Shown here: one piece after another, positions 4,492-63,596 of the stretch
Position numbering within the stretch: position 1 is the first letter of the stretch
Layout of the letters: each line of letters starts with the position of its first letter
Virus record (IMG/VR): IMGVR_UViG_3300046810_000338
Coordinates: 1 to 64,000 of that record
Length of the DNA: 64,000 nt
Reading direction: 5' to 3' (one strand)
Program-made: the position numbers and the translations under genes
The notes under the pieces: model-generated
The model's input: only the letters and a program-made list of their open reading frames with translations
Told to the model about the DNA's origin: nothing
Database searches by the model: none

Positions 4492-4594
4492 GGGGGTTCT
4501 CCTGAAAATCGTATTCAGAGCGTGGGGAGAGAGGCGTGAACAAAAAGATCCACATAGGATTAGCCCATTAAAAAATAATACTTAGGGCATAAAT

Positions 4595-4620
4595 GAAAGG
4601 GAGCCCAAAGGCTCCCTTTC
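4595..4620 (-). terminator. Terminator-like hairpin followed (minus strand) by TTATGCC and a T-tract
   Basis: GAAAGGGAGC-ccaaag-GCTCCCTTTC; GGCATAA at 4586-4592 and an A-run at about 4570-4575. Confidence 0.75.
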
Positions 4621-4648
4621 ACACTGTCTTTTTTAGAGACAAGTGGTC

Positions 4649-5188
4649 TTAGACCACCGGCGCAGCAGGGTAGTTCAGACCGCTCAGAGTGGTCACGGTG
4701 ATCACTTCGGACAAAGGAATGTCCTCGGCGTGCAGGGTGATCGACAGAGCGCCTTTGAAGACCAGGGAACCGGCAGTGATTGGCAGCGAAACGACTTTGG
4801 TTTCGTTCGGCTCGCCAGCCCAGGCGCCGATGGCGCTGTCGGTGTAGTCGTCGGCAGTCAGGTTGACGCCCAGACCGGTGTTGACTTCCAGGATCAGGTC
4901 AGCCAGGTTCTCGGCATCGCCAACTGGCAGCGAGAAGGTCTCGCCGAAAGTGAAGCCTTGCAGGTCGAGACGGTTGTATTTGACCACTTCGGAACCGGTA
5001 TAACCGGAACCAGCCTTGGCGGTAACTTCCAGCTCGGTGTCGCCGCTGGCGTCAACGACGGCTGCAACGGTAGGAACGCCCAGGGTGATGGTCTGGTTGG
5101 TGATCGGCTTGGTGGTGTTGTCCGCAGCAATCAGGTCGATGATGATATCGGCCGGTGCTTTGGAGAAGTCACTTACGTGCAGTGCCAT
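4649..5188 (-). CDS. Virion structural protein, paralog family (179 aa)
   Basis: GDTELEVTAKAGSGYTGSEVVKYNRLDL; strong C/G third-position bias suggests high expression. Confidence 0.85.
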   Translation of the reverse strand: MALHVSDFSKAPADIIIDLIAADNTTKPITNQTITLGVPTVAAVVDASGDTELEVTAKAGSGYTGSEVVKYNRLDLQGFTFGETFSLPVGDAENLADLILEVNTGLGVNLTADDYTDSAIGAWAGEPNETKVVSLPITAGSLVFKGALSITLHAEDIPLSEVITVTTLSGLNYPAAPVV

Positions 5189-5281
5189 GACGCGTTACCT
5201 TTCATTAGGGGATGGTAATGGAGGACATGTTAACCCCCACATACCATAGTAAGGTTATAGCTAACCCATTTGGTCCCTATT

Positions 5282-5983
5282 ATGAATGGCAAATTAATCA
5301 CCTTGGAATCTACCGAGGGAGCAGGAAAAGGCACTGCCAAAGAATTTCTGCACGACTGTCTCTCCGGGGTCACCGGCCAAAAAAGAAAGCGCTACGATGG
5401 TATCGCTGGTCCCGTAATGACCCGTGAACCCGGCGGTACTCCTCTGGCCGAAATCATTCGGGAAGTGCTACTGGCCCCCAGAGAAGAGCAAATGTGTGCC
5501 CCCACAGAACTGCTACTTATATTTGCAGCCAGGCAGCAGCATTTGACAGAGCTTATCAGACCCAGGCTGGCAGAGGGGCGTGTCGTTGTCTGTGAACGTT
5601 TTGTGGACAGCACCTACGCCTATCAGCACTACGCCAGAGGTTTGTCTAAGTCACTCATAGACGCCCTTGTAGAACTGCTAAAGCCGCCTGTGCCGGACAT
5701 TACCTTTTTACTGGACATTGATCCAGAGATTGGCATGGCCAGGGCCACTGCTCGTGGGGTATTAGACCGCTTTGAGCAAGAGTCCATGGCCTTCTTTCAT
5801 CGGGCGAGGTCTGGTTTTCTAACACGGATGGCCGAAGATACTACTGGACGCTTCCGACTTATCGACGCAAGTCAGCCACTGGCTAACGTACGTGGCCAAT
5901 TCATTCATCACCTATTGACCGACGGTTTGATTTCTCAAACCACGGTTTCATTAATCGAGGAGAAATACGATGTCACCTATTGA
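5282..5983 (+). CDS. tmk: Thymidylate kinase
   Basis: P-loop ESTEGAGKGT, TREPGGTPLAE.IR, ELLLIFAAR.QH, CERFVDSTYAYQ, PDITFLLDIDPE. Confidence 0.95.
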   Translation: MNGKLITLESTEGAGKGTAKEFLHDCLSGVTGQKRKRYDGIAGPVMTREPGGTPLAEIIREVLLAPREEQMCAPTELLLIFAARQQHLTELIRPRLAEGRVVVCERFVDSTYAYQHYARGLSKSLIDALVELLKPPVPDITFLLDIDPEIGMARATARGVLDRFEQESMAFFHRARSGFLTRMAEDTTGRFRLIDASQPLANVRGQFIHHLLTDGLISQTTVSLIEEKYDVTY

Positions 5984-6794
5984 AAAAGCTATTAGCATTC
6001 TGGCACCGCTGTTGGAAGATGGGGATGACGGCTCCCTGTTGGTTGACAACTACCCTACTCTCAAAGCAGTGCTGGATGAACTCACCGAATATGTTAACGT
6101 TCAGTACCGGGCTAAAATCGCTGAGGCCAACATCCGTCCCAAGTTGCCCTTTGATTTGGAAGCTGCCCACCAGCGCATTGCAATTATCGCCGGTCTGAAG
6201 GGCTTTTTGAATCTGGACTATGAGTTGGGTTCTAATCCTATCCCAGCGACAGTGGCCGAACCCGCGCGCGCCTGGATCAAGGAAGTTCTGGCCTACGCTG
6301 AAGATACTCAAGGTCGGCGTGAGTCCATCAACGGCGACAACCTGGTTGAAAGCCAAGGCGTAACCGTTGGCAGTTCCAAGCCTGCTGAAGAGGTGCTCAC
6401 CGTGACCCTTGAGGACAGTGACCTTAAGGCCGCCGCCGACAAACTGGTAGACAGCGTGTATGATCGTTTAAAGAGCGCTACGTTCGACCCCACCTTTGAG
6501 CCGGGGCCTCACAATGCCCTTGAGTTCATGCTCAAAGCTGAGGATGAAAGAATTCGCGCCGATGCCCAGATTCAGCTGGAACGCTATGCATCCATTCTCG
6601 GTCTGGATCTGAAGAAAGCACTGGCCGAACACGAATACGCTCCAAGTCCTCTAACCAAGGCCTTCACCGCACTGCTCGACCTTCGCGACCGCCTGCTCGC
6701 TCGCACCGGCAGCTTTGTCCACCCTGATGAAACAGTTGCTTCCATCGAGAACCTGGTGGTTCAATTCACATTGTGGGCCGGGGCCAAGCCATGA
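5970..6794 (+). CDS. Hypothetical protein (274 aa)
   Basis: Long ORF overlapping tmk stop, GAGGAG RBS. Confidence 0.75.
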   Translation: MSPIEKAISILAPLLEDGDDGSLLVDNYPTLKAVLDELTEYVNVQYRAKIAEANIRPKLPFDLEAAHQRIAIIAGLKGFLNLDYELGSNPIPATVAEPARAWIKEVLAYAEDTQGRRESINGDNLVESQGVTVGSSKPAEEVLTVTLEDSDLKAAADKLVDSVYDRLKSATFDPTFEPGPHNALEFMLKAEDERIRADAQIQLERYASILGLDLKKALAEHEYAPSPLTKAFTALLDLRDRLLARTGSFVHPDETVASIENLVVQFTLWAGAKP

Positions 6795-7932: not shown

Positions 7933-7936
7933 CGAT

Positions 7937-8362: not shown

Positions 8363-8372
8363 ACCGGCATAA

Positions 8373-8404
8373 ATCCCAGTCCACCCCTAAAGGCGGACTG
8401 GGAT
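8373..8404. terminator. Bidirectional terminator-like hairpin flanked by GGCATAA / TTATGCC
   Basis: ATCCCAGTCC...GGACTGGGAT between convergent genes. Confidence 0.75.
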
Positions 8405-8408
8405 GACC

Positions 8409-8810
8409 TTATGCCACCGGTTCAGCTGGAGCATCTTCGACCGCGGCATCGGCTGCCACAACTTTGGCAGCGTAGCCTTCAGGCATGGACAGAGTCACTT
8501 CCACCTTCAGGCTCATGGGACTGTCGCCCCAAGGAGAGTCGCCGCTAACACGCATGTTGCCAGTGTCTGTCTCGGCGAACACGTACAGCGCCAGAGTGCC
8601 ATCCAGCGCCAGAGTGAAGCTGTTGGCGAGGGTGTACTCGTCCAGCACCGTCAGGTTCTCGATGGCATCAGGAATGCCTGACTTCTTCAAGTCCACGAAA
8701 GTAATACCGGTGATCACCAGATTGGGATCGATGGCCTGTTGTTGGCGAACCAACGAGAACAGGTCAACTTCGGTACGGCCGATGAGCGAAGCAATAACTT
8801 GGATCTGCAT
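8409..8810 (-). CDS. Hypothetical, probably virion-associated protein (133 aa)
   Basis: GAGG RBS; downstream of structural paralog on same strand. Confidence 0.75.
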   Translation of the reverse strand: MQIQVIASLIGRTEVDLFSLVRQQQAIDPNLVITGITFVDLKKSGIPDAIENLTVLDEYTLANSFTLALDGTLALYVFAETDTGNMRVSGDSPWGDSPMSLKVEVTLSMPEGYAAKVVAADAAVEDAPAEPVA

Positions 8811-12975: not shown

Positions 12976-12999
12976 ATTTATGCCCTTAAATCAACTTAA

Positions 13000-15617: not shown

Positions 15618-15656
15618 GCAGACGGGGGAGCAATCCCCCTACTGCTTATTTTTTTG
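15618..15656 (+). terminator. Rho-independent terminator
   Basis: GCAG..GGGGGAG-caa-TCCCCC..CTGC followed by T-tract. Confidence 0.75.
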
Positions 15657-15667
15657 TTGGGGTAAGC

Positions 15668-16231
15668 ATGTCCAATTCACTGTACAAGAAAATTGCAGGC
15701 ATCAAACCTACCATGGGTCCCATCACGGGTACTCTATTGGGCGTCTGTAAAGCGGCTGGGTGGGAGAATGCTTTCATTTGGTTATTCTCCAACTTCACGG
15801 ATGAGGGTAAAATGTTTCGTCGCTACCAGTCGATTGCACTGGATAGCCAAAAAAGAATACAATCCATCATTGACAACAGCCCTGTACTGAGGGCTTGGGA
15901 AAAGACTGTAAATGCGGCAACTGAAAATAGCAATGAGCGGATGGTGTGGTGGGTGTTGTTTGACCTGTTCACTGTTGAGCAGATGGTTCGGTTACACAAT
16001 AATTGGCTGTCTTGTGTTCGTCGACAAGATGTGCTTGTGATCCTGAATACCTGTAATGAGATCTTCAATCTCCTACAGGAAAACTCCATGGCCGCTAAGA
16101 ACGGTCTGGTATTGAAGGAGAAGGAATATCTTCAGTGCATGGCCAGAACTTGGATCGCTCAAGCCATCTTCAGCTTCAACCCAAACAACGGATCGGTCAG
16201 CCAGATAGCTCACCGATTGGCGCGGGCATAA
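15668..16231 (+). CDS. Hypothetical protein (187 aa)
   Basis: ORF between terminators. Confidence 0.75.
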   Translation: MSNSLYKKIAGIKPTMGPITGTLLGVCKAAGWENAFIWLFSNFTDEGKMFRRYQSIALDSQKRIQSIIDNSPVLRAWEKTVNAATENSNERMVWWVLFDLFTVEQMVRLHNNWLSCVRRQDVLVILNTCNEIFNLLQENSMAAKNGLVLKEKEYLQCMARTWIAQAIFSFNPNNGSVSQIAHRLARA

Positions 16232-16285
16232 ATTCTCCCCTCTGGCTTTAGGGCCAGGGGGGTTTATGTCCATTAGTTAACTTTT

Positions 16286-16302
16286 TTATAGACCTAGATT
16301 AT
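16286..16302 (+). promoter_or_regulatory. Candidate phage early promoter motif
   Basis: TTATAGACCTAGATTAT. Confidence 0.7.
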
Positions 16303-21766: not shown

Positions 21767-21803
21767 CATAAATGCCCAGGCTTCTTAGGCCTGGGCATTT
21801 ATG
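21767..21803. terminator. Long inverted repeat terminator incorporating CATAA/TTATG
   Basis: CATAAATGCCCAGGC-ttctta-GGCCTGGGCATTTATG. Confidence 0.75.
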
Positions 21804-21820
21804 CCATTGGGAGATAAATC

Positions 21821-22696: not shown

Positions 22697-22741
22697 CTAA
22701 GGGATCGATGCCGGGAAACCGGCATCGGTTTATGGTCATGT

Positions 22742-23414: not shown

Positions 23415-23507
23415 CACGGCATAGAGCCTTGTCCAAAGAGGACAAGGCTCTGTTGTCAAGTATAATTTTTTGGCAGTATAGTAAAAACCATCTGGGAGAA
23501 TGTTGTA

Positions 23508-34154: not shown

Positions 34155-34163
34155 ATCGCATAA

Positions 34164-34189
34164 GCTCCCCCATCTTCGGATGGGGGAGC
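34164..34189 (+). terminator. Hairpin with TTATGCC and displaced T-tract
   Basis: GCTCCCCCATC-ttcg-GATGGGGGAGC; TTATGCC at 34197-34203; T6 run just after. Confidence 0.8.
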
Positions 34190-34232
34190 ACTTCTATTAT
34201 GCCTTACTTTTTTGTCTTGTCATTTAAATGGA

Positions 34233-38225: not shown

Positions 38226-38254
38226 CCCACTCTCCTAGCAGCTAGGAGAGTGGG
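38226..38254 (+). terminator. Hairpin followed by TTATGCC
   Basis: CCCACTCTCCTAG-cag-CTAGGAGAGTGGG then TTATGCC at 38256. Confidence 0.75.
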
Positions 38255-38327
38255 CTTATGCCGTCATTGGAGCTCCTGTAAGGGCGTCTGAGCGGTTTAA
38301 ATAGATAACCGAAGAAAGGATAAGGCA

Positions 38328-40534: not shown

Positions 40535-40594
40535 ACCCACAACGCCTGTGAGCAATTTCTGCTCACAGGCTTTATGACATTTGAGGAGTTACAC

Positions 40595-41734
40595 ATGTAC
40601 AACGATAAAGTTCGCAACTTTGAACTGTTGGTAAACAATCTCTGGGCAATCGTCAAGAACATTCGCAAGATCGCCACAACGTGGCCGATCAACGTGGCCA
40701 ACATCGAACAAGAGATACTGCATCCCAAGAACGACGACAAACTCTACATGAACTGGTTGCTGTTGCCTTACTCGGCGCTGGAACCACGGTTCATTGCAGG
40801 GTTGGTGTCGGTCAGTCTCAACCTCATTCCAGATCACCTCGTGCACCTGAACGAATCAGAGTTCCTCCATCGGAGTGGTGGGGTAATCCTCTCTCCGGCC
40901 GAACGACTGGAGATGGCTAAGCTCGATTTTAAACTCTTTCTGGATGACTTCGCGGCCGAGAAGTTTATCCTGGACGACGAGATTGAGTTCACCGGCGGGA
41001 TGTGGACTTACCTCAAAATCTGGGCAATGCGTTTTGTTGGCGCCGAGCATTTTCTTGAACAGGTCTTTGCCCTGAAAGTGATGCAGCCCGACGATGCTTT
41101 AAGGAACAACGATCTGCCAAGCGAAGCGGTGCGGGCAATCAACATTAACTTTGCTGCCGAAACGTTGCTCGATGCAGCGGGTGCCGACATCATCTCCAAA
41201 GAAATGGCGATTGCGCTGATTGAATCTGGCAGGGACCCGTACAGAACACGGCAGGAGGTTAGCAACCACACCTACGTCATGGCAAACGTTGCCAGGGGTT
41301 GGGGGAATGATCTAGGTCGGTACGAAGGCAGTTCCGATAGCAAAATCCTCGCACTGCCGATGGTTCGTACCTTGTTGATCGAACTCTTTGACGAGTCCTA
41401 TTATCAGGAAAATCAGCAAACCCTGCTGCGGTTGATCCACGACTGTCTGGTGGCGTTTGCTCTGCCTGTGCCTCATTGGGAGACGTTCGGCGGCCTCTCG
41501 GACGAGACCAGAACTCGCGCCATGTTGCTGGTTGAAGAACTGGGCTACGACACCGACTCCCATCGGTGGGGCTTCGGTGGTGCCGAGGTAACGCTGTTCA
41601 AACTGATGGCCGGTGACCCAATGGCTATTACTCGATTGAAAGCCTGCCGTAAATCAGCAGACTACCACTGCGAGCTTTACAACATCCTGACCATCTACAA
41701 TGAAGTAGCTCGTCTGGTTGGCCACGAGGCGTAA
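40595..41734 (+). CDS. Hypothetical helical protein, paralog of 39365-40534
   Basis: GAGGAG RBS before ATG 40595. Confidence 0.8.
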   Translation: MYNDKVRNFELLVNNLWAIVKNIRKIATTWPINVANIEQEILHPKNDDKLYMNWLLLPYSALEPRFIAGLVSVSLNLIPDHLVHLNESEFLHRSGGVILSPAERLEMAKLDFKLFLDDFAAEKFILDDEIEFTGGMWTYLKIWAMRFVGAEHFLEQVFALKVMQPDDALRNNDLPSEAVRAININFAAETLLDAAGADIISKEMAIALIESGRDPYRTRQEVSNHTYVMANVARGWGNDLGRYEGSSDSKILALPMVRTLLIELFDESYYQENQQTLLRLIHDCLVAFALPVPHWETFGGLSDETRTRAMLLVEELGYDTDSHRWGFGGAEVTLFKLMAGDPMAITRLKACRKSADYHCELYNILTIYNEVARLVGHEA

Positions 41735-41784
41735 ACCAACAGCATACAGCCACTCTCTCCCATGTGGGAGAGAGTGACTTATGT

Positions 41785-42063
41785 TTACCCATTACTTTTT
41801 TGTTCCACCACTTCTGGAGCGTAATACACTGCCATGACCACCTGACCGGCAGCGCCTGCATTAGCAAAGAAACCATGCACCTGGTCAACCCGATAGTCAA
41901 CACCCACATGCATGGTCATCTTGGCCTCAGAAGGCCCTGAGGCTGCGACCACGGCTTCTTTGAGCATGCCGGGCACTGCCTTGGAGGTAAACACTCGATA
42001 CACGTTCAGCGGCTTACTAGGCGCTCGGTTACGAACGTTAAAGTCTGGATGACATTCGCTCAT
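41785..42063 (-). CDS. Hypothetical protein (92 aa)
   Basis: ATGA coupling with upstream minus-strand gene. Confidence 0.65.
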   Translation of the reverse strand: MSECHPDFNVRNRAPSKPLNVYRVFTSKAVPGMLKEAVVAASGPSEAKMTMHVGVDYRVDQVHGFFANAGAAGQVVMAVYYAPEVVEQKSNG

Positions 42064-46608: not shown

Positions 46609-46742
46609 GAGACACTGCATCGTGCACCCTAACACTTCCAAACTCAAACCCACCCCGCAGGCTAAAGACTTCGACAAGCTCTTTGACGAGGTTTTCACCA
46701 GCGGCATAAACCAGCCTGGCCCAAGGACCAGGCCGGTAAAAG

Positions 46743-47666: not shown

Positions 47667-48707
47667 ATGAGTAACAAAGTAAACATCGTTGCTTGCGGTG
47701 GCTTCGGTCAAAACATCATGATCCTTTTCTCGGAGCGTGAAGTCTTCAGACAGCTGCACGAACATCTGAACCTCATCGCCCTCGACACCAGTCCTTCTAA
47801 CCTGAAGCGCTTTGCTGGCAAGCCGATCGACGACGTCGTCACCAAGATCCTGGTCCCCAACGTTAACGGCTCCGGTAAATACCGGGCCGAGAACTACGAA
47901 CAGATCGTTTCCATGACCACCGAACTCGTCAACAGCGACCAGCTGTCCGAGGGCCTGACTATCCTCATCTCGTCGGGGTCCGGTGGTTCGGGTGCAGTAA
48001 CGGCTTCCGAGCTGCAACAGCTTCTGGGCGATCGCGGGCGTCCTGTGTTGGCCATGATGCTGGGCACTGACGAAGATGCGACGGCGGTGGAAAACACTCT
48101 CAAGTCCGTCAAGACCTTGCAACACAAGGCTGGCCAGGGCAAGAAGAACTTCACCTTGTTCTATGGCAGCAACCGCTTCCCAGACCCGAAAGACGAAAAG
48201 AAAACGGTCATCGACGAAGTCAAGGCCGATACGCTGTTCGTCACCAACCTGGAAGACCTGGTCATGGTTGGCCATCCAACCAACGAAGATCTGGACAGCA
48301 AGGACATCTACAACTGGCTGAACTTTCCGATCAAACAAACCGAGCCAGGCACCGTTCGTTTCCTGTCCCTGACCAGCCGCCGCGAGAGCGAAGATTTCCC
48401 GACCACCGGCGAAGCTCCAATCACTGCACTGTCCCTGCTGTCCAAGCGCGGTATCACTCCCCAGTTCCCAGAAGGTGCTGGTTGGACAACTCGCGGCTAT
48501 GTGACCGAAGGCCTGGCGTTCGTTGACGACGTGGTCGAAGTTCAGTACCAGCTCTTCGCCGGCAAATCGGCTAAGCTGACCAACCAGCTGGAACAAACCC
48601 TGAAGACCTTCGCCGGCATTCAGGAAAAGCAAGCCGAAGCTGCGGCGGGCGACAAGCTCAAGACGTCTGAAAAGGACAAAGTGTCCGACAGCGGTACGTT
48701 CCTGTAA
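47667..48707 (+). CDS. phuZ: PhuZ phage tubulin
   Basis: ACGGFGQNI, IALDTS.SN, NGSGKYR.EN, tubulin signature SGSGGSGAV, LDSKDIYNWL, acidic C-terminal tail. Confidence 0.93.
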   Translation: MSNKVNIVACGGFGQNIMILFSEREVFRQLHEHLNLIALDTSPSNLKRFAGKPIDDVVTKILVPNVNGSGKYRAENYEQIVSMTTELVNSDQLSEGLTILISSGSGGSGAVTASELQQLLGDRGRPVLAMMLGTDEDATAVENTLKSVKTLQHKAGQGKKNFTLFYGSNRFPDPKDEKKTVIDEVKADTLFVTNLEDLVMVGHPTNEDLDSKDIYNWLNFPIKQTEPGTVRFLSLTSRRESEDFPTTGEAPITALSLLSKRGITPQFPEGAGWTTRGYVTEGLAFVDDVVEVQYQLFAGKSAKLTNQLEQTLKTFAGIQEKQAEAAAGDKLKTSEKDKVSDSGTFL

Positions 48708-48778
48708 GTAACAGATCGGTCACCGGGGAAACCCGGTGACCTTTTTACTCACTGCTTTATTTTTTTGTTGGAGCAGAC

Positions 48779-48940: not shown

Positions 48941-49077
48941 TAGTATTGAGTAGAGGATGGTTGCAGCCAACCATTGGAAGTCTAAGGACAGACTCCTACT
49001 TGCATCTCCAGGTGCTCAAGTCCCGCCCTTTCGGGGGCGGGCATTTATGCCCAACTGCTTAATTTTTGGAGGATTAC

Positions 49078-49509: not shown

Positions 49510-49620
49510 TATGCGGAAGTACATCTTCCGAATAGGACAGGCGGATACGTTGAGCGAATAGGGTCTTGAGTCCAATCAGCTGCAACCCCGCTAAAACCGA
49601 GCCCACCTTCGGGTGGGCTT
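49510..49620 (+). ncRNA. Candidate small structured RNA
   Basis: Two stems plus terminator in an ORF-free gap. Confidence 0.35.
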
Positions 49621-49646
49621 TTTTATGCAGTCATTAGGATACGACC

Positions 49647-50027: not shown

Positions 50028-50239
50028 GCGGCGTGTTCAGATGCACTCGATGTAACTACGTCGACCACATGGACATCGTTTACTTTCTGGGCAACGATCG
50101 AGACGTAGACAATCGACCGATCAATTTGTTGTGTACGGTCTGCCACGGGCTGCCTTGGCATGACCGCATGCTGCGACTGAAATACAACCCAGAAATACAC
50201 GAGGTGGTCAATCCTCCCCCAGAACTTATTCAAACCTAA
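50024..50239 (+). CDS. Small Zn-finger protein (71 aa)
   Basis: CTRC...LCTVC...WH. Confidence 0.7.
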   Translation: MSGVFRCTRCNYVDHMDIVYFLGNDRDVDNRPINLLCTVCHGLPWHDRMLRLKYNPEIHEVVNPPPELIQT

Positions 50240-50534
50240 CCAGGCTGCGTAAGTTATTGATAAGACTCTGCCGGTTGTACTCCTTACGGCTGAGTTAATC
50301 CGAGGCTTTCACTGAACACTCTTTGGGGAGAGGGTTTGCGTGGTAGGCTTCATGTGTGGGCGATCCACCCCTGTCCTCCTCACGGACGGACAGGGGCTTT
50401 ATGCCTAATGTTTAGTCGAGCTTCTGTAAGCCACCTAGAAGAGCAATTAAATTGAAACTGCAACGGGATATCCTGTAGGAGGCCATCGCCTCTTAGACGC
50501 GATTCTAGAGCCGCCTGAGATCCATACGACGGAT

Positions 50535-50551
50535 TCTCAGACCTAAATTAT
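50535..50551 (+). promoter_or_regulatory. Candidate phage early promoter motif
   Basis: TCTCAGACCTAAATTAT. Confidence 0.65.
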
Positions 50552-50580
50552 CTACGTGATCTGGGTTCTGGTGTCGTACT

Positions 50581-50913
50581 ATGAATATCAACCATATACC
50601 AGGGTTGCATTCTTCGATTCTTTTCCATGTAACCGAGTGGCGACATGAGCTCTTTCAAGTTGGAGTTTACGTCAACTTGGCAGACTACATTGCTTGGATT
50701 TTGATCAACCTTGGCTATCCTGTCCTAACCCCATTTGGGTCAGAGCCTGCGTTGACTGAAAACGGCAAGGCGGTAAGGTATCACCATGAAAAGGATATTC
50801 TCCTATTCATGAATGAAACGCTATCGCATGCCGGATATAACGGGGAAGAACTGTGGGTGACATCTCGCGGTAGCAGCTTATGTGCGATAAGCTTTATAAG
50901 GAGTGCTGTCTGA
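50581..50913 (+). CDS. Hypothetical protein (110 aa)
   Basis: First gene after promoter motif. Confidence 0.65.
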   Translation: MNINHIPGLHSSILFHVTEWRHELFQVGVYVNLADYIAWILINLGYPVLTPFGSEPALTENGKAVRYHHEKDILLFMNETLSHAGYNGEELWVTSRGSSLCAISFIRSAV

Positions 50914-55150: not shown

Positions 55151-55176
55151 TTTTTTTTTTGTTCCAAGGAGCAGTT

Positions 55177-56450: not shown

Positions 56451-56549
56451 CTGGTAGGGCAGTCCATGGGAATTCCCATGGACTGCCTCTATGCCGTCGA
56501 TTAGAATTACCCGGAGACATTAGATAGTCCCCCACGCAAGATTTAGACC

Positions 56550-56978
56550 ATGTCCAGTCCAGCCATTGCGATCATTAACCTAGAAGAAATGATAGCTGAC
56601 TTTAGAAACTATCTCCGAGAAGATTGCGGTCAATCAGAGATGGCAGCACAGTTTCCAGACCATTTCTTGGTCCAAGAATTAGAATACCTTGCCAGAGTGG
56701 CTGTCAACAGAAACCACCTGAATGTTCACCCGCGACTGCGACGTACTCGCCACATCTTCAAAATGTTCGACCCAACCTTTTCTAAAGACCAGATCAATGA
56801 ATGGGCGGATGAAATGTACATGCGGGTACGTGAAGAATTGCCTACCCGTATTGCTGAAGCTGGACATATTTTCCAAACCCAGGCTGTCGGCAAAACGCTG
56901 TATATCAGATTACTTGTCTCCGCCGACGCATTTGGCTACGGCATCGACCCCCACTCGATTATTGACGCGGTGATCTAA
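56550..56978 (+). CDS. Hypothetical protein (142 aa)
   Basis: TAATG coupling to DNA polymerase. Confidence 0.75.
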   Translation: MSSPAIAIINLEEMIADFRNYLREDCGQSEMAAQFPDHFLVQELEYLARVAVNRNHLNVHPRLRRTRHIFKMFDPTFSKDQINEWADEMYMRVREELPTRIAEAGHIFQTQAVGKTLYIRLLVSADAFGYGIDPHSIIDAVI

Positions 56979-59239
56979 TGGATCATTTCCTTTTACACCC
57001 GGACCAGTACGTCCGAGATCTAAACGTAGTTGCCACCTACTTTCGCGACAATGCTTTCATGTTGGGCAAACTACGGAACATGCCGTGGGAGCCTGCTGTT
57101 GAGTTTGTTCGCCGCAAGGTGGGTAAAGATGGCGAGTTCCCCATCAAGAATCCACTGGTTACCATCATCGACAAAGATGAGAATGGTGACCGGTTTGTTC
57201 GCAAGGTAGGTTACCTCAACTATCTCAAGAACATCGTGGCGAAAGATCTTATCTGCTCGCCTAGCATGACCACATACCTGCGACCAAAGACCCTGCAAAG
57301 CGAAATGGGTCTGTACATCAACGGCAACCTTGGCCTGCGTAACGAAGCCAAAGAAGAAGGTCTGGTAGCAGAGCTTTCGGCTAACGGCTACGGCGCTCAG
57401 ATTCAGGATCTGATTGGCGACAGGAGTAAAGAAGGCTGGGTTATGCCCCCACTGACCCCTGCCTTGCAAGCTCGACTAGCCGACTTGGAGATCGAGTTCA
57501 AGAAACACGATCAGGTTGCCGGCATCAAGCACAACGAACAGACCTCGCACAAGATCTTCAACAACGGGATCTCTGGCATGCAGACCATTGGGTCTACGCC
57601 GTTTGTGTTGGTATCTGCCCACTCATCGCTGACCAGTGGGTGTCGTTCTGCAACCAGTTATGGTAACGCCACTATTGAGCGCTTTGTAGCCGGCTCAAGA
57701 CATTATTGGTCGCCAGAAGTAGTGATGACCCAGATCACTACGATCGTCACTCATACCGACTATGTCGAGTTTGAAAAGGTGATGACCAAGTACAACCTGA
57801 AATACCCCAACGTGGACGAGATCTACAAACTCATCAAGTACAGCACTGACCTTTATTGGCACAGTGAAGTTGAGATGGAGTTGATCATCGAGTACGTGCA
57901 AACGCTCAATCCATTGGAGCGTGCAGCCTTTGCCTACACAGGCGACATGTACCACCTGCGTAAGTTCAACCCAGAGTTCATGACCGTGTACCTGGACGAG
58001 CTTTCCATGGCGGTTAAGGGCGATCATCCTGATCCACTGACGGCCATCAAGAAAGTTAAAGGCGACCATCGGGCCCTGGCATTGATTCTGTGTGCCGAGG
58101 TTACTGCCGGTAAGTCCATTGACGACTTGAAGAACGAAGGGAACATGGAAGCCCTGTCCATGATCGTGTTGACCTTTGAACACATCATGGCTACTTTGGA
58201 TAAATACGCTGACCTGATCAAAGTGTTCTGGACGACGCTTAACGTGCCGCCTAACATTTCCAGGACGCGTGATATCCGTAGGCGCTCTGTGGTAGGTTCT
58301 GATACTGACTCCTGCCTCTTTGGGGTGCGTGAGTGGGTCAAGTGGAAGAACGGCTACGCCAAGTTCGACCAGCCATGTCAGGCAACCTGGCACACTGTGG
58401 TGTTCATGGCCTGTCAAACCGTGACACACGCATTGGCTTGCTTGTCGGCAGGTATGGGTGTAGAAGGGGATGATGTTAAGAAGCTGGCAATGAAGAACGA
58501 GTTTGCATTCTCTGTCTTCGGTCTGACCAACATCGCCAAACACTACATTGCCTCCATGATTGCAAAAGAAGGCAGTGTGTATAAGAAAGCCAAGAAGGAG
58601 ATCAAAGGAGTTCAGTACAAAGACTCCAACAGCCCACCAGAGATCATCGATGAGTCTAACGACAATATCGTGTCTGTGATGGACCAGATCTACCAACATG
58701 GCTCGTTTGAGATCATGCCGATCATCCGCGGTATGGCTGATACCGAACGGGAAGTTACCGAGTCGATCAAGAAGGGAAATACCAAGTACCTTAAGTCGGC
58801 GTATGTGCGGCCCAAGGAAGACTACAAGAAACCGATGTCGTCTAACTACTTCCATTACGAGCTGTGGCAAAAGGCATTCGCTCACCGAGGCGCGGTGCCT
58901 TCTCTGCCATATCGAGCGGTAAAGATTTCTGTGGACCTGCCTAACAAGACAGCCATTCGCGAGTGGATTGCTAACATTGAGAATCCAACCTGTAAGGCTG
59001 CCCTGGAAGACTTCTACATCCATGGTATTGATGGGGATAAACCAAAAGCTGCAATCACCTCGTTCCTCATGCCGCTTGACATTGTGCAACGTGATGGTAT
59101 CCCGCCAGAGATCTTAGAAGCCGCTGGTATCCGCAGACAGACCTACGCAGCAGTTAGTCCATTCTACCTGTTCGCAGAGACGCTAGGATTGCCTATGGTG
59201 AATAAGAACCTGACAACCATGCTGTCGGATAGTTTGTAA
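56978..59239 (+). CDS. Family B DNA polymerase, phiKZ gp50-like catalytic subunit
   Basis: Motif B-like KIFNNGISG, motif C-like VGSDTDS, KLAMKNEF, EIKGV; position upstream of the chimallin block. Confidence 0.9.
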   Translation: MDHFLLHPDQYVRDLNVVATYFRDNAFMLGKLRNMPWEPAVEFVRRKVGKDGEFPIKNPLVTIIDKDENGDRFVRKVGYLNYLKNIVAKDLICSPSMTTYLRPKTLQSEMGLYINGNLGLRNEAKEEGLVAELSANGYGAQIQDLIGDRSKEGWVMPPLTPALQARLADLEIEFKKHDQVAGIKHNEQTSHKIFNNGISGMQTIGSTPFVLVSAHSSLTSGCRSATSYGNATIERFVAGSRHYWSPEVVMTQITTIVTHTDYVEFEKVMTKYNLKYPNVDEIYKLIKYSTDLYWHSEVEMELIIEYVQTLNPLERAAFAYTGDMYHLRKFNPEFMTVYLDELSMAVKGDHPDPLTAIKKVKGDHRALALILCAEVTAGKSIDDLKNEGNMEALSMIVLTFEHIMATLDKYADLIKVFWTTLNVPPNISRTRDIRRRSVVGSDTDSCLFGVREWVKWKNGYAKFDQPCQATWHTVVFMACQTVTHALACLSAGMGVEGDDVKKLAMKNEFAFSVFGLTNIAKHYIASMIAKEGSVYKKAKKEIKGVQYKDSNSPPEIIDESNDNIVSVMDQIYQHGSFEIMPIIRGMADTEREVTESIKKGNTKYLKSAYVRPKEDYKKPMSSNYFHYELWQKAFAHRGAVPSLPYRAVKISVDLPNKTAIREWIANIENPTCKAALEDFYIHGIDGDKPKAAITSFLMPLDIVQRDGIPPEILEAAGIRRQTYAAVSPFYLFAETLGLPMVNKNLTTMLSDSL

Positions 59240-59810: not shown

Positions 59811-59876
59811 ACAATTGCGATAGCGTTAACTTAACGGCATAACTCTCCTCTTCCCGTAAAAGGAAGAGGAGAGGCT

Positions 59877-60971
59877 TTATGCGGTGGTTCGCACAACAAG
59901 GTCTTCCAGTTTGTCCTGTACATTAGATCGTACAGCGCTGCCTAATGCTACACTCAAACCTCCATCGTTGATCATTCGAAAGATAACTCGACGAATGTCG
60001 TTGACAGGATATCGCCCGGCTCGACTGGCATCCATCCGCGTCAGTGCCCAGAGGTAACGCAGGGCATTGTAACGGGAGAGTACCAGCGCCCATGTGTTCT
60101 GTCGGGTGGGCAAACCTTCTGGCAACGTCAATACGTCAGCCAAGGTTTCAGACATAGGAACAGGCAGCATCCCTAAGAGAAACTCGAAGGTGACATCGCG
60201 TCCGAGGATTATTTTAGAAATGCTCTCAAGGATACTTTGACCGCCCTGCGTTCTGTTGACATACGACTGACTCAGGCGGTAGTAGACATCGCTGACTGGC
60301 AAGCCCTCAGCGATGGCCGTAATGCGATTCATCATGGCAATGGCGTACTGGCTGGCTTTGAGTTTGGGCAGTACGTGCATGCCTACAAAGATCTGTGGCG
60401 TACGCAGATCTGTTTCACCCGATGCCAGTTGCTCTCTGGTCCACAACGTGTACTGGAGCATCAGCAAACCAAGGTCAATCTCAATCGAGTCCAGACCCAA
60501 GCCAATCCGCGATTCAGCGATTGCCTTGCTGCCCATCGTAAGGTTGGTGGAGTCGTGACTGAGATACCGAATGGCAATGATGTCGGTGTAAGGCGTGTTG
60601 CGGGTAACGCCAAGACGTCTGGGAGATTCGCCCACCAGGTAAATCGTTGTGTTACCCTGATCGCCGATGTGCAGTCTGCCAGCATTGGCGGACGTAGTAA
60701 AGCCAAAGGTTGAGGATATCTCGCGGGTTAGAAAAGCCACGCGTCGATAGATGTCCTCCACAGTTCGATCCAGGTCGTAACCGAGCTTTTGACCCAGCTC
60801 CAAGATAAGGCTTACCATCCAGTGATCTGCTGGCACAAAAGCAATGTCACGGTTGCGCCAATCAATGTAGGTACGGATGTCCAATTCGTAGTTTGTCACG
60901 AACTGGGTAGACGAGCCTACTGGCGTTGGCTTTGCATCTACTCTTAGCTTTCCGCCAATTAGGTCGAACAT
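59877..60971 (-). CDS. Conserved chimallivirus protein upstream of and divergent from chmA
   Basis: Synteny pol - reverse gene - chmA - RNAP; ATG 60971 (MFDLIGG...) with AAGGA RBS. Confidence 0.8.
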   Translation of the reverse strand: MFDLIGGKLRVDAKPTPVGSSTQFVTNYELDIRTYIDWRNRDIAFVPADHWMVSLILELGQKLGYDLDRTVEDIYRRVAFLTREISSTFGFTTSANAGRLHIGDQGNTTIYLVGESPRRLGVTRNTPYTDIIAIRYLSHDSTNLTMGSKAIAESRIGLGLDSIEIDLGLLMLQYTLWTREQLASGETDLRTPQIFVGMHVLPKLKASQYAIAMMNRITAIAEGLPVSDVYYRLSQSYVNRTQGGQSILESISKIILGRDVTFEFLLGMLPVPMSETLADVLTLPEGLPTRQNTWALVLSRYNALRYLWALTRMDASRAGRYPVNDIRRVIFRMINDGGLSVALGSAVRSNVQDKLEDLVVRTTA

Positions 60972-61144: not shown

Positions 61145-61210
61145 AAAGGGAATCATGGTTGGGATCTTGATTTATTTGGCCAAATGTAACATCCCCTAAG
61201 GAGACGGCAC

Positions 61211-63262
61211 ATGCCCGTTAAGAAAACTGGCGATGGTGGAAACATCATGGCGGCGGCTTTGTTAGCTGCCGGTGTGAAGCCTTCCACCGAACCAACCCCG
61301 GCACCTGCCGCAGCGTCTTCCGCTGCTCCAGTTCAGCCGGCAGCAGAATCAGTGGCGCCCACCCCGGCACCAGTGAAACCAGAACCTGTGCAACCAGCGA
61401 CGCAGCAACGCGCTAACCCTGCACCCGTTCAACCAACCCCCGTACAAAAGGATACAGTGCAAATGTCTCAGAACACTCAGGACTTCTCCAACTCCCGTCG
61501 CGACCAGGCCCCTAACGGTCAGTTCACGCTGGAATCTCTCGGTGCTCGCCGCGTCCGTCCAATCGGTCGTTCGGCAGGCTCCGTGCGCGCCAAAGCCCTC
61601 GAAGAGGTGCTGATCAAAGAAATGTCCCGTTCCCTGCAACAGGACACCGTTTCCAAATTCGCTATCCAGACTCTGGACGCCAACTCGCTCGGCCTGCCAG
61701 TGCCTGCCGTTCTGATCATCCAGACCGTTGTTACCCAGGGCATCGACAACCTGTCGGTCTTCTCGATCCTGCTCGACGGCGACGATGTTCGTCTGCCTAA
61801 CCGCATCGACAAGGTCGAAGGCCGCTCCATCGAAACCCCAACCGTCGTCGGCGACATCTACAACAGTCAGGAATACCTGACTCGCATGACCGAACTGGTA
61901 ACCATGGCTCGCCCTGGCCGTCAGCTGAAAATCATCGACGCCGGTTGCATCGTGCTGCCGAAAGACTTCAACCTGGAACAGAGCGATATCCACGGCCTGC
62001 TGCACAAGTCCACGCTGGCCGCCTGGAACGCCATGAACCAGAACGTAGTCCTGGACGATACCCCTGCTTACACCCTGGTCGGCCGTAACAGCAACCAGGA
62101 ACAACTGATCGGTCGCATCAACACCACCGGCGAGAACTACCTCGACGAAGTGGGCATGCCAATCCGTTCCGACTTCGTCCTGGAAATGGACTCGTCCCGC
62201 CATCAAGCGGGCCGTGAATTCCTGACCAGTTCGAGCAACATCGTCAAGGTTGCTGGTTACGTTGAACCGGTTTACACCCAACCGGTCCAAGACCCGAATG
62301 CGCCGAACAACCAGCCGTTCCTGGCTCAGATCGTTCTGACTCGTCTGGCTACTGGCTACGACGCCGCCGACACCGAAATGAACATCCTCAGTCTGGTGAC
62401 TGCGGCGATGATCCAGGTGCAAAACGGCTGGGCGGACATGTTCCGTCCACGCTACAACAAGAAAGATGGCGATGTTGATTACCGCGACATCGGTGCTCTG
62501 GGTTACTGCACCGAGAAAGCTGCCAAGATCGACAGCCGTAGCGACAGCTTCAAGAACAACTTCCCGGCCTTCATGCGCGACTACTTCCGCCTCAATCAAG
62601 GCGTGGTCTTCGCTCTGGACATTCCTGAAGTCGGTCCTGACGTACTGAACCTCGACATCTTCCGCGCTGTGGCCAGCGGCAACGCCAACGCAATCGCTGC
62701 TTTCATCCGTGCCTGCGACAACCTGACCGGTGGCATCTACAGCAAGAAAGCGTCGATCATCGGCGATTTCTCGATGATCATCGATACCGGCAACCGCATC
62801 CACAACGGCTACTACCCAACCGACACCGGCACTGCGGCGATCCGCGATATCCGCGACATCGATCTGCTGGCCGTTGCCAACCTGTACGGCAAAACCAACC
62901 CTGCGGCAATGATGCAGTGGGCTGACTCGTTCTCGCCGAACACCGCTCCTGCGGCTGTACGCATGGCGAACCGCCTGGCCATCATCGACGACGCTCTGAA
63001 CGGTCGTCAGGTTATCACTGGTTACTCGGGCCGTTACTTCATCGGTCCAAAATGGTTCGAAGTGATCACCTCGGCGTGCCGTGAAGCTGGTCTGGTGGTT
63101 AACCCTGCCAACATGGTTCACGGTCTGGGCTCCGGTCTGATCATGGGCGGCTACGACTACTCGCAGTTCACTGCCGGCCAAGCTGGTCAGTCGATCTACG
63201 GTGGCGCTACCGCTGCTGGTCCAGGCGCAGCATTCAACGGCCGTCCTGGCGGTCGTTGGTAA
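61211..63262 (+). CDS. chmA: Chimallin, phage nuclear shell protein
   Basis: 683 aa, extreme codon bias, disordered termini, FRPR..KK..VDYRDIGALG and FALDIPEVGP segments; directly upstream of nvRNAP beta-prime as in phiKZ gp54-gp55. Confidence 0.88.
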   Translation: MPVKKTGDGGNIMAAALLAAGVKPSTEPTPAPAAASSAAPVQPAAESVAPTPAPVKPEPVQPATQQRANPAPVQPTPVQKDTVQMSQNTQDFSNSRRDQAPNGQFTLESLGARRVRPIGRSAGSVRAKALEEVLIKEMSRSLQQDTVSKFAIQTLDANSLGLPVPAVLIIQTVVTQGIDNLSVFSILLDGDDVRLPNRIDKVEGRSIETPTVVGDIYNSQEYLTRMTELVTMARPGRQLKIIDAGCIVLPKDFNLEQSDIHGLLHKSTLAAWNAMNQNVVLDDTPAYTLVGRNSNQEQLIGRINTTGENYLDEVGMPIRSDFVLEMDSSRHQAGREFLTSSSNIVKVAGYVEPVYTQPVQDPNAPNNQPFLAQIVLTRLATGYDAADTEMNILSLVTAAMIQVQNGWADMFRPRYNKKDGDVDYRDIGALGYCTEKAAKIDSRSDSFKNNFPAFMRDYFRLNQGVVFALDIPEVGPDVLNLDIFRAVASGNANAIAAFIRACDNLTGGIYSKKASIIGDFSMIIDTGNRIHNGYYPTDTGTAAIRDIRDIDLLAVANLYGKTNPAAMMQWADSFSPNTAPAAVRMANRLAIIDDALNGRQVITGYSGRYFIGPKWFEVITSACREAGLVVNPANMVHGLGSGLIMGGYDYSQFTAGQAGQSIYGGATAAGPGAAFNGRPGGRW

Positions 63263-63265
63263 GTA

Positions 63266-63535
63266 ATTCGGTAAGGCGCTTCGTTTAGACGCAGCGCCAT
63301 GCTGGATGTGAGCAAAGCCCTTTGGGGCAATAGGGTCATGGGATAGATCCCCTAATTCCCAATTGTGGAAAAGTCCTGCTCACCCCTTGTCGGATGCCCG
63401 AAACAAACTGTGTCGTTACACGGAGCTGACTCTCCATCGGGATAAACATCTGGCGGAAGATAGGGTGACACAAATGCTTCCTGACCGTAGGTTGGGAAAA
63501 GATCATGGGTAGGCTGCCCAGTGTTCACCCGGTAT
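63266..63535 (+). ncRNA. Candidate multi-domain structured RNA in chmA 3' region
   Basis: Nearly every base fits into nested helices forming three multibranch domains (see findings). Confidence 0.6.
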
Positions 63536-63555
63536 AGCCCTCCTTCGGGAGGGCT
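63536..63555 (+). terminator. UUCG hairpin followed by TTATGCC and T-tract
   Basis: AGCCCTCC-ttcg-GGAGGGCT; TTATGCC at 63560. Confidence 0.8.
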
Positions 63556-63596
63556 TTACTTATGCCCTCACTTACATTTTTTGTTGGAGGATTATC

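What the first reader, a model, noticed from the sequence alone, without database searches (positions are those of the whole stretch)
4586..63566. Recurring composite boundary element: GC hairpin + (T/C)TATGC(C) + displaced T-tract
Seen: many gene-boundary hairpins lack an immediate U-tract and are followed instead by TTATGCC or a close variant: 8409, 16264 (TTATGTC), 21799, 34197, 38256, 40572 (TTATGAC), about 41779 (TTATGTT), 49045, 49623 (TTATGCA), 50399, 56489 (CTATGCC), 59877 (TTATGCG) and 63560; a copy at 12978 follows a weaker stem. The reverse complement (G)GCATA(A) flanks hairpins at 4586, 8366, 16225, 23418, 34158 and 59836; at convergent junctions (8366-8415, 59836-59883) both sides carry it. 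A T-tract, often TTTTTTGT, frequently follows roughly 5-15 nt further on (34208, 41787, 63578). Inference: a phage-RNAP-specific terminator, an RNA-processing signal, or a terminator fused to a TATG-type nvRNAP promoter.
Basis: partly seen in the sequence, partly recalled or inferred. Interest (0 to 1): 0.6.

Follow-up and report, generated by a model that had tools for sequence, protein, structure and literature searches.

The report
phiKZ-type transcription terminators: hairpin plus TTATGCC
The repeated "GC hairpin followed by TTATGCC" is real and is most likely this nucleus-forming jumbo phage's version of the transcription terminator already mapped by RNA sequencing in phages phiKZ and 201phi2-1, so it is a new example of a known signal, not a new kind of element.

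Summary
In the window, 16 of 28 oriented flanks of intergenic perfect hairpins (stem at least 8 bp) carry TATG, against a 4.4% background (p = 3e-15). Genome-wide the figure is 56 of 96 (p = 3e-48). Hairpins inside genes give 0 of 22.

The window is the first 64 kb of a 228-kb metagenomic chimallivirus that encodes chimallin, PhuZ and an nvRNAP beta subunit. The consensus here, (T)TATGCC(G)T placed 0-4 nt after the stem, is the published phiKZ terminator motif (hairpin + TTATKYYGT).

All eight 201phi2-1 termination sites printed in the literature fall 1-2 nt after the G of that motif, or at the same position in one TTATAC variant. That is 7-9 nt after the core stem, the usual intrinsic-terminator geometry.

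In this genome TATG is enriched only in convergent (terminator-only) spacers: 42 copies against 13-26 for its permutations. It is not enriched in divergent (promoter-only) spacers.

A syntenic relative keeps the motif at six orthologous sites while the stems change, partly by compensatory substitutions. The displaced T-run is also conserved, at a fixed distance from the hairpin.

Verdict: terminators of a known kind. A fused TATG promoter is not supported but is not excluded.

The parts
4586..4622 (-). Terminator. Hairpin 4594-4621 (12 bp, loop 4), then TTATGCC at 4586-4592 on the minus strand. A T6 run follows at 4570-4575 (minus). It lies between two minus-strand genes.
   Evidence: dG -22.7, gap 0
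8366..8415 (.). Bidirectional terminator at a convergent junction. Hairpin about 8373-8407. TTATGCC on the minus strand at 8366-8372 and on the plus strand at 8409-8415.
   Evidence: dG -22.1 plus / -27.5 minus
12978..12984 (+). TTATGCC after only a weak stem (-12 kcal/mol). Doubtful member. It sits 22 nt upstream of a promoter-like ACCTAGAGTATC motif.
15618..15657 (+). Variant terminator. Hairpin 15618-15645 followed directly by TTATTTTTTTGT (T-run type, no TATG).
16225..16287 (.). Hairpin 16237-16262. TTATGCC on the minus strand (16225-16231), TTATGTC on the plus strand (16264-16270), then T6 at 16282-16287.
21767..21805 (.). Hairpin 21772-21798, extended by CATAAAT/ATTTATG pairing. TTATGCC on the plus strand at 21799-21805; TATG also on the minus side.
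22706..22734 (+). Hairpin 22706-22727 (9 bp, GAAA loop), then gtTTATGg.
23418..23451 (-). Hairpin 23423-23451 with CTATGCCGT on the minus strand (the 7-mer CTATGCC is 23418-23424).
   Evidence: dG -18.1, gap 0
34158..34215 (.). Hairpin 34164-34189 (UUCG loop). CTTATGC on the minus strand (34158-34164), TTATGCC on the plus strand (34197-34203), then TTTTTTGT at 34208-34215.
38226..38264 (+). Hairpin 38226-38254 (13 bp), then TTATGCCGT at 38256-38264. The full 9-mer matches the phiKZ consensus.
40544..40578 (+). Hairpin 40544-40570, then TTATGAC. The next gene starts 22 nt downstream of the TATG with its own Shine-Dalgarno sequence.
41743..41803 (.). Hairpin 41751-41776. TTATGTT on the plus strand (41779-41785), TATG on the minus strand (41743-41746), then TTTTTTGT at 41796-41803.
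46703..46737 (-). Hairpin 46710-46737, then TTATGCC on the minus strand (46703-46709), after a minus-strand gene at a convergent junction.
48718..48768 (+). Hairpin after PhuZ (48718-48741). TTTTT follows, and TTATTTTTTTGT lies 18 nt downstream; there is no TATG here. The orthologous site in relative L137 has hairpin + TTTATGCC + T10GT.
49022..49051 (+). Hairpin 49022-49041, then catTTATGCC.
49599..49629 (+). Hairpin 49599-49620 (UUCG loop), then TTTTATGCA. The ortholog in L137 has a different, compensated stem and keeps TTATGC.
50369..50405 (+). Imperfect hairpin 50369-50395, then TTATGCC, inside an 885-nt stretch without a called gene. The ortholog in L137 keeps CTTATGC.
56457..56497 (+). 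Hairpin 56457-56488 (dG -28.5), then CTATGCCGT. The sequence CTATGCCGTCG.TTAGAAT is identical in L137 although the stem is different.
59834..59885 (.). Bidirectional terminator at a convergent junction. Hairpin 59843-59873. TTATGCCGT on the minus strand (59834-59842) and TTATGCG on the plus strand (59877-59883). Both flanks are conserved in L137; the stem is not.
63536..63584 (+). Terminator after chimallin and its conserved 3' non-coding block. Hairpin 63536-63555 (UUCG loop), TTATGCC at 63560-63566, TTTTTTGT at 63577-63584. There are two compensatory pair changes against L137.

Best explanation
These elements are the transcription terminators of a chimallivirus (nucleus-forming jumbo phage). 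They are of the type described for phiKZ and 201phi2-1. A stable GC hairpin in the nascent RNA is followed after 0-4 nt by (U)UAUG-C-C-(G)U instead of a U-tract.

By analogy with the mapped ends in 201phi2-1, the RNA should end at UUAUGY(Y), just before the conserved G. That is 7-9 nt after the core stem, the geometry of hairpin-driven intrinsic termination.

The motif reads the same on both strands wherever two genes converge, which gives bidirectional terminators.

The mechanistic detail below is inference and is not shown. The conserved pyrimidine at the 3' end and the G that follows match the Y(-1)G(+1) elemental pause consensus of multisubunit RNAPs. The G-rich 3' arm supplies G at -10/-11. 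So the sequence may supply the pause that a U-tract normally gives. Because the hybrid (UUAUGYY) cannot shear easily, release may need forward translocation. The T-rich DNA placed at a fixed distance downstream (T6-10 followed by GT) may help by being easy to melt. Alternatively it may be a back-up stop.
For: Identity of the phage:
- Chimallin, PhuZ and a divergent family-B DNA polymerase are present.
- nvRNAP beta homologues and gene order match phiKZ.
- There is no excess of sigma-70-like promoters.

Same motif as the published one:
- phiKZ terminators are BCCYCCCCHWWDGGGRRGGBYTTATKYYGT at 61 RNA 3'-end sites (PMC10914365).
- 201phi2-1 motif A occurs at 59 sites, and eight elements were validated in vivo (PMC11512511).
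- With one pipeline, my logos are gg..TTATGCc.T here and GG.tTTATGttGT in phiKZ.

RNA 3' ends map inside the motif:
- Seven of the eight printed 201phi2-1 TTS lie 1-2 nt after the G of the post-hairpin TATG. The eighth lies at the same position in a TTATAC variant. All are 7-9 nt after the core stem.
- One phiKZ RNA end given in the text does the same.

Context in this genome:
- 65 of 84 oriented copies follow a co-oriented gene.
- 33 of those face a convergent gene.
- Only one real copy lies in a promoter-only position.
- TATG against its 11 permutations: 42 versus 13-26 in convergent spacers, 32 versus 32-66 in divergent spacers.

Selection:
- In a syntenic relative (proteins 30-80% identical), six orthologous sites keep (C/T)TATGC while every stem differs.
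- Compensatory pair changes occur at three of the sites.

Same architecture in other lineages:
- TATG follows 33-45% of strong hairpin flanks in phiKZ, 201phi2-1, Ea35-70, FLC9 and Xoo-sp14. It does so in 3% in SPN3US and 6% in T4.
- T-runs cluster at a fixed distance from the stem in each of these genomes.
Against: - There are no RNA data for this uncultured phage; only a rhizosphere DNA run holds it. So 3' ends here are inferred by homology of the signal.
- ONT 3' ends cannot distinguish termination from 3' trimming, and their resolution is about 1-2 nt.
- The pause and forward-translocation mechanism is my inference from E. coli RNAP literature. It is untested for phage RNAPs.
- The gap between stem and TATG varies (0-8 nt), so some copies would place the end outside the 7-9 nt optimum.
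- About 40% of strong intergenic hairpins lack TATG, so it is not the only terminator form.
- The role of the T-run is not established.
Confidence: 0.8

Rival explanations
1. Dual element. The hairpin terminates upstream transcription and the adjacent TATG is also a late promoter for the non-virion RNAP, with the start at the G as in phiKZ. Each boundary would both stop and restart transcription.
For: - The phiKZ late promoter is TATG with +1 at G. It is necessary in vitro and is bound on the non-template strand by a pocket of the beta-like subunit gp123.
- Several pocket residues (F151, K158, H331, S334, Q466; Y406 as F) are kept in this phage's homologue.
- In co-directional spacers the TATG lies 11-150 nt upstream of the next start codon.
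- One copy (genome 221289-221329) sits in an apparently divergent spacer.
Against: - 33 of 65 copies that follow a gene face a convergent gene, so a start there would only make antisense RNA.
- TATG is not enriched in 26 divergent, promoter-only spacers. It is the joint-lowest of 12 permutations.
- The validated phiKZ promoter P119L has no hairpin and no YYGT.
- The mapped RNA 3' ends in 201phi2-1 lie downstream of the G.
- 201phi2-1 has 59 such terminators but only 24 late-type start sites.
- The pocket is reported as incomplete in the transcribing complex.
- The residue alignment is at about 25% identity and is confounded with phylogeny.
Confidence: 0.1
2. RNA processing or stability element. 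Transcription ends further downstream, for example at the T-run. The observed type of 3' end is made by exonucleases stalling a few nucleotides after the hairpin, or by an endonuclease that recognises UUAUGYY. The hairpin then protects the mRNA.
For: - 3'-end sequencing cannot separate termination from trimming.
- A T-run followed by GT sits at a fixed distance downstream of the hairpin.
- Extra-stable UUCG and GNRA loops occur in some stems.
Against: - Exonuclease stalling needs no conserved sequence. Yet a 9-nt motif is conserved across six lineages with 37-58% GC and at orthologous sites.
- Eight 201phi2-1 elements cut expression of a downstream reporter in uninfected cells as well as or better than lambda T0 (six of the eight).
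- Most copies (about 80%) have no T-run downstream.
- The ends lie at the canonical 7-9 nt from the stem.
Confidence: 0.08
3. DNA-level or selfish element: a dispersed palindromic repeat (REP/MITE-like) or a protein-binding palindrome GGCATAA...TTATGCC, unrelated to transcription.
For: - Many copies are flanked by inverted GGCATAA/TTATGCC.
- A few stems recur, for example CTCTCCCTCTTCC at genome 88892 and 169080.
Against: - Stems differ between most copies and between orthologous sites, while pairing is kept.
- The two flanking motifs often sit at unequal distances from the stem, for example 34164 with gaps 0 and 7, and 200227 with gaps 1 and 6. They are therefore not one palindrome.
- Single-sided copies follow the direction of the upstream gene. 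Two-sided copies are 13 of 17 at convergent junctions against 8 of 18 between co-directional genes (my count from the table).
Confidence: 0.02

Closest known systems
phiKZ intrinsic-terminator motif (Putzeys et al. 2024, PMC10914365): BCCYCCCCHWWDGGGRRGGBYTTATKYYGT
   Same: - GC hairpin with a pyrimidine-rich 5' arm (0.68 here, 0.70 in phiKZ).
- TTATG-Y-Y-G-T begins 0-4 nt after the stem.
- Located at gene ends, and bidirectional between convergent genes.
- A T-run often follows.
- The host phage is a chimallivirus with collinear gene order.
   Different: - Here the two Y positions are C (TTATGCC) in a 52% GC genome; in phiKZ they are mostly T (37% GC).
- The T-run starts 16-21 nt after the stem here against 8-15 nt in phiKZ.
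- No RNA ends are mapped for this phage.
- Its DNA polymerase is only about 32-36% identical to any isolate.
201phi2-1 terminator motifs A and B (PMC11512511)
   Same: - Same hairpin + TTATGYYGT: 41 copies of the 9-mer against 12 for the reversed control.
- An upstream CATA mirrors the downstream TATG.
- The TTS lies at one fixed position in the motif.
   Different: The published work reads the upstream motif B as lengthening the stem. Here the two flanks often sit at unequal distances from the stem and track convergent genes, which fits independent strand-specific signals better.
Canonical bacterial Rho-independent terminator (hairpin + U-tract)
   Same: - Stable GC hairpin.
- RNA end 7-9 nt after the stem, as seen in 201phi2-1.
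- Works with host RNAP in a reporter assay.
- Some copies here are fully canonical (15618-15657).
   Different: - The U-tract is replaced by UUAU followed by G-C-C. TTTT occurs within 12 nt in only 6% of flanks.
- The simple terminator scan finds no significant excess in 30-50 kb: 26 against 19.1 +/- 4.5.
- The tail sequence is conserved, not just U-rich.
phiKZ late promoter TATG (Yakunina 2015; Chen 2026)
   Same: The same four bases; the G is the start site in phiKZ.
   Different: - Promoters such as P119L have no hairpin.
- Here TATG is enriched where only terminators are expected and not where only promoters are expected.
SPN3US / pVa-21 type chimallivirus terminators
   Same: Hairpin followed by TTAT.
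   Different: In those phages TTAT continues into a T-run that starts 0-11 nt after the stem. TATG follows 3% of flanks in SPN3US and 15% in pVa-21. The TATG form is therefore lineage-restricted.

Membership tests
phiKZ-type chimallivirus terminator | GC-rich stem-loop followed within a few nt by TTAT(G/T)YYGT | tested here: met
   Logo gg..TTATGCc.T with a gap of 0-4 nt, from 54 aligned copies. All 20 reader sites were verified.
phiKZ-type chimallivirus terminator | Pyrimidine-rich 5' arm and purine-rich 3' arm (CCYCCCC...GGGRRGG) | tested here: met
   The 5'-arm pyrimidine fraction is 0.68 with TATG against 0.52 without (p = 0.006). phiKZ gives 0.70 and 201phi2-1 gives 0.69. Ea35-70, FLC9 and Xoo-sp14 have the opposite polarity.
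phiKZ-type chimallivirus terminator | Sits after gene ends; two-sided between convergent genes | tested here: met
   65/84 oriented copies follow a co-oriented gene. By my count from that table, 13/17 convergent junctions are two-sided. TATG is 2.2-fold enriched in convergent spacers only.
phiKZ-type chimallivirus terminator | RNA 3' ends map at the motif | not testable with these tools
   No RNA run holds this phage. In 201phi2-1, 8/8 printed TTS fall at the same position in the motif, and one phiKZ end does too.
phiKZ-type chimallivirus terminator | The genome is a chimallivirus with its own multisubunit RNAPs | tested here: met
   Chimallin (PF25677), PhuZ, and gp55 and gp123 homologues are present, with synteny to phiKZ.
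Canonical intrinsic terminator | Run of U directly after the hairpin | tested here: not met
   TTTT lies within 12 nt in 8/144 flanks (6%). Exceptions: 15618-15657, and genome 128698.
phiKZ-type late promoter (TATG, +1 = G) | Lies upstream of a gene it can transcribe and is enriched in promoter-only spacers | tested here: not met
   33/65 copies face a convergent gene. In divergent spacers TATG scores 32 against 32-66 for its permutations.
phiKZ-type late promoter (TATG, +1 = G) | Capped 5' end at the G; nvRNAP initiates there | not testable with these tools
   There are no RNA data. The supplementary TSS tables are not held.
Dispersed palindromic repeat (REP/MITE-like) | Copies share one sequence | tested here: not met
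   Stems differ among copies and between orthologous sites while pairing is kept.
Rfam families | Match to a curated RNA model | tested here: not met
   0 matches at gathering score in the window.

The most novel reading that the evidence does not exclude
The terminator's TATG is read by the same non-template-strand pocket of the nvRNAP beta-like subunit that recognises TATG at late promoters. The polymerase's own promoter-recognition site would then impose a sequence-specific pause that replaces the U-tract. In that case termination and (re)initiation would share one recognition event. The loss of TATG terminators in SPN3US-like phages would go with changes in that pocket.
Probability: 0.15. 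Interest if true: 0.7.

Novelty: new member of a known kind. Interest (0 to 1): 0.35.

Why it matters
For this genome, the motif gives a ready-made map of transcription-unit ends in an uncultured, very divergent nucleus-forming phage: about 20 sites in the window and about 50 in the record.

More generally, the hairpin + TTATGYYGT + spaced T-run architecture survives across at least six chimallivirus lineages, with GC content from 37% to 58% and polymerases about 25-35% identical. It is absent from SPN3US-like phages.

That argues that the tail is a specific signal and not a degenerate U-tract. It also gives a clean set of natural variants for asking how phage multisubunit RNAPs, which lack the usual bacterial partners, terminate.

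Finally, these are candidate strong, compact and often bidirectional terminators for synthetic biology, as was already shown for 201phi2-1.

Tried and rejected
- Nucleotide search of 8 kb of the window against isolate phages: no match.
- Chimallin against IMG/VR: no relative. The DNA polymerase against JGI metagenomes gave one useful relative.
- Public runs: only one DNA run (rhizosphere metagenome) holds the stretch, and none is RNA. No reads were laid.
- Rfam and tRNA scans of the window: nothing.
- Folding every position of the genome timed out.
- A -12 kcal/mol threshold was too permissive, because 13% of random sites pass it. I replaced it with perfect-stem cores.
- Supplementary TSS/TTS tables of the phiKZ and 201phi2-1 papers, and the 2014 phiKZ transcription paper, are not held. 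I used the eight TTS positions printed in the text instead.
- Idea that one-sided elements use 4-nt UUCG/GNRA loops and two-sided ones use long loops: not significant (Fisher p = 0.21). Dropped.
- Reading the ATG of TTATG as a start codon: rejected. Downstream genes have their own Shine-Dalgarno sequence and ATG, for example the gene starting at 40595, 22 nt downstream of the TATG.
- Reading GGCATAA...TTATGCC as a mere stem extension: weakened by unequal gaps on the two sides.
- Conservation of gp123 pocket residues as a test of the pause idea: suggestive only, and confounded by phylogeny and the low-identity alignment.
- The sigma-70 promoter scan shows no excess: 13 against 16.3.

Full report
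**What the window is**

The window is the first 64 kb of a 228,499-bp IMG/VR virus record. It encodes:
- a chimallin (61211-63262);
- a PhuZ tubulin (47667-48707);
- the divergent family-B DNA polymerase typical of phiKZ-like phages (56978-59239).

tblastn with phiKZ proteins finds the nvRNAP beta pieces (gp55 homologue at 63597-65087, gp123 homologue at genome 119666-121282), the major capsid protein, the sheath and the terminase, in phiKZ-like order.

It is therefore a nucleus-forming jumbo phage (chimallivirus). It is far from every isolate: its DNA polymerase is at most 36% identical. The only public run that holds it is a rhizosphere metagenome, and no RNA run holds it. Sigma-70-like promoters are not in excess, as expected for a phage that brings its own RNA polymerases.

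Only 12978 has a weak stem.

TTATGCC is 2.6-fold over shuffles in the window. The real signal is the link to hairpins:

| Set | Flanks with TATG | Background | p |
|---|---|---|---|
| Window, intergenic perfect hairpins (at least 8 bp) | 16/28 | 4.4% | 3e-15 |
| Genome, same class | 56/96 | 4.8% | 3e-48 |
| Window, hairpins inside genes | 0/22 | 2.3% | n.s. |
| Genome, hairpins inside genes | 1/48 | 2.4% | n.s. |

(All.)

An immediate T-run follows only 6% of flanks. The aligned copies give (T)TATG-C-C-(G)-T, starting 0-4 nt after the stem.

**It is a known signal**

ONT-cappable-seq of phiKZ found 61 terminators sharing 'a stem-loop followed by a TTAT region', BCCYCCCCHWWDGGGRRGGBYTTATKYYGT (PMC10914365). 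201phi2-1 has the same motif at 59 sites, and eight elements terminate in vivo in uninfected P. chlororaphis (PMC11512511).

Running my own pipeline on phiKZ gives GG.tTTATGttGT. This is the same 9-mer, with T where the GC-richer phage has C. The pyrimidine-rich 5' arm is shared too.

**Where the RNA ends**

The supplementary tables are not held, but the 201phi2-1 paper prints eight TTS coordinates. On NC_010821 all eight lie on the plus strand. Seven lie 1-2 nt after the G of the post-hairpin TATG (TTATGY[Y]|GT). The eighth lies at the same position in a TTATAC variant. All are 7-9 nt after the core GC stem.

A phiKZ small-RNA 3' end quoted in the text behaves the same way. That is the classic distance for hairpin-driven intrinsic termination.

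**Terminator or promoter?**

phiKZ late promoters are TATG with +1 at the G, and are read by a pocket in gp123. The context here argues against it:
- Of 84 oriented hairpin+TATG copies, 65 follow a co-oriented gene.
- 33 of those face a convergent gene.
- Only one genuine copy sits where only a promoter would make sense.

I also compared TATG with its 11 same-composition permutations:
- In 26 convergent spacers it is the only enriched word (42 against 13-26).
- In 26 divergent spacers it is the joint-lowest (32 against 32-66).

Two-sided copies are the rule at convergent junctions (13/17) and less common between co-directional genes (8/18), by my count from the table. The two sides often lie at unequal distances from the stem. 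That fits two strand-specific signals better than one long stem. The validated phiKZ promoter P119L has no hairpin.

A different, clearly promoter-like motif exists in this genome (see the last section).

**Evolutionary test**

A JGI metagenome contig (L137; DNA polymerase 66% identical, neighbouring proteins 30-80%) is collinear with window 46.7-69.7 kb.
- Six orthologous boundaries have hairpin + (C/T)TATGC in both genomes.
- No stem is the same.
- Compensatory changes are seen in three: after chimallin (C-G to G-C and U-A to C-G), after genome 67011 (G-C to A-U), and at 49600.
- At 56489 the tail CTATGCCGTCG.TTAGAAT is identical although the stems are unrelated.
- After PhuZ the relative has TTATGCC where the window has only the T-run.

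**Distribution across phages**

TATG follows 33-45% of strong-hairpin flanks in this phage, phiKZ, 201phi2-1, Erwinia Ea35-70, Burkholderia FLC9 and Xanthomonas Xoo-sp14, against backgrounds of 0.8-4%. The consensus is TATGCCG(T/Y).

It follows 3% in SPN3US, 9% in EL, 15% in pVa-21 and 6% in T4. In SPN3US and pVa-21, TTAT runs straight into a T-tract.

**The displaced T-tract**

It is real and conserved. T6+ runs, usually followed by GT, start 16-21 nt after the stem here, whether or not TATG intervenes. They start 8-18 nt after the stem in the other TATG-type phages and 0-11 nt in SPN3US and pVa-21. The 10-20 nt after TATG are T-rich in all six lineages.

Seven of the roughly 19 runs here face a convergent gene, so the run is not a ribosome-site feature. 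Because the mapped ends lie upstream of it, it is probably downstream DNA at the moment of release. Its role (easy melting for forward translocation, or a fail-safe stop) is my inference only.

**Mechanism proposed (inferred)**

The hairpin forms. The polymerase is held at UUAUGYY|G, which matches the Y(-1)G(+1) pause rule, with G at -10/-11 supplied by the 3' arm. Release then occurs 7-9 nt from the stem.

The bolder idea is that the nvRNAP's promoter pocket also grips TATG during elongation. This cannot be excluded. Several pocket residues are kept here, but the pocket is reported incomplete in the transcribing complex.

**Verdict**

This is a real, highly non-random feature: a new member of the phiKZ-type terminator class. 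The added value is modest:
- breadth across lineages;
- the fixed position of the RNA ends within the motif;
- the fixed-distance T-run;
- the context test that separates it from the TATG promoter.

**Other things seen**

- A promoter-like motif, cag-ACCT(A/G)(A/G)A(T/G)(T/C)AT(C)..GTGA, occurs 15 times in intergenic DNA. All copies are on the plus strand, mostly 38-150 nt (up to about 940 nt) upstream of plus-strand genes, including chimallin. It is kept at two orthologous places in L137.
- The 270-nt non-coding stretch after chimallin is strongly conserved in L137, with five further compensatory pairs.

Noticed in passing
window 13006, 16292, 34239, 43227, 50541, 59292, 61134 (plus 8 more in the record, e.g. 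71411, 112269, 145173, 169668, 213783): A second conserved intergenic motif, (t)tnCAG-ACCT(A/G)(A/G)A(T/G)(T/C)AT(C)..GTGA. There are 15 intergenic copies, all on the plus strand, mostly 38-150 nt (up to about 940 nt) upstream of plus-strand genes, including chimallin. It often lies just after a terminator and its T-run. Two copies are kept at orthologous sites in relative L137 (4343, 12362). It looks like a phage promoter class, possibly early (vRNAP).
   Followed up: partly
window 63263-63535: The roughly 270-nt non-coding stretch between the chimallin stop and its terminator is strongly conserved in L137. It includes a 25-nt identical block, AAAGATCATGGGTAGGCTGCCCAGT. RNAalifold predicts helices with five compensatory pairs besides the terminator. 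This is a candidate structured 3' UTR or small RNA, supported by only two sequences.
   Followed up: partly
window 50028-50912: An 885-nt stretch with no confidently called gene. It contains a terminator (50369-50405) and, 135 nt later, the ACCTAAATTATC promoter-like motif (50541). Both are conserved in L137. It may hold small genes or a non-coding RNA.
   Followed up: no
G000 versus Ea35-70, FLC9, Xoo-sp14 (whole genomes): The polarity of the terminator stem differs between lineages. The 5' arm is pyrimidine-rich here and in phiKZ and 201phi2-1 (0.68-0.70) but purine-rich in Ea35-70, FLC9 and Xoo-sp14 (0.23-0.32). The TATGCC tail is the same in all.
   Followed up: partly
window 55151-55160: A T10 run followed by GT sits directly after a stop codon and 26 nt before the next start, with no hairpin. 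It is the only intergenic T6+GT run of 16 that lacks an upstream hairpin.
   Followed up: no
G000 221289-221329: One strong hairpin + TTATGCC + T-rich tract lies in what my gene map calls a divergent spacer. The flanking 103-aa minus-strand ORF may be a false call. Otherwise this copy is the only one in a promoter-only position.
   Followed up: no
window intergenic regions, e.g. upstream of genome 86017, 134844/134993, 164988/165124: CTATA(T/G)-like words (TATAGC, ATATAA) are 5-9-fold enriched upstream of genes, notably in divergent spacers next to structural genes. They may mark another promoter class. The major capsid gene (115679) has no TATG in its 128-nt upstream spacer.
   Followed up: no
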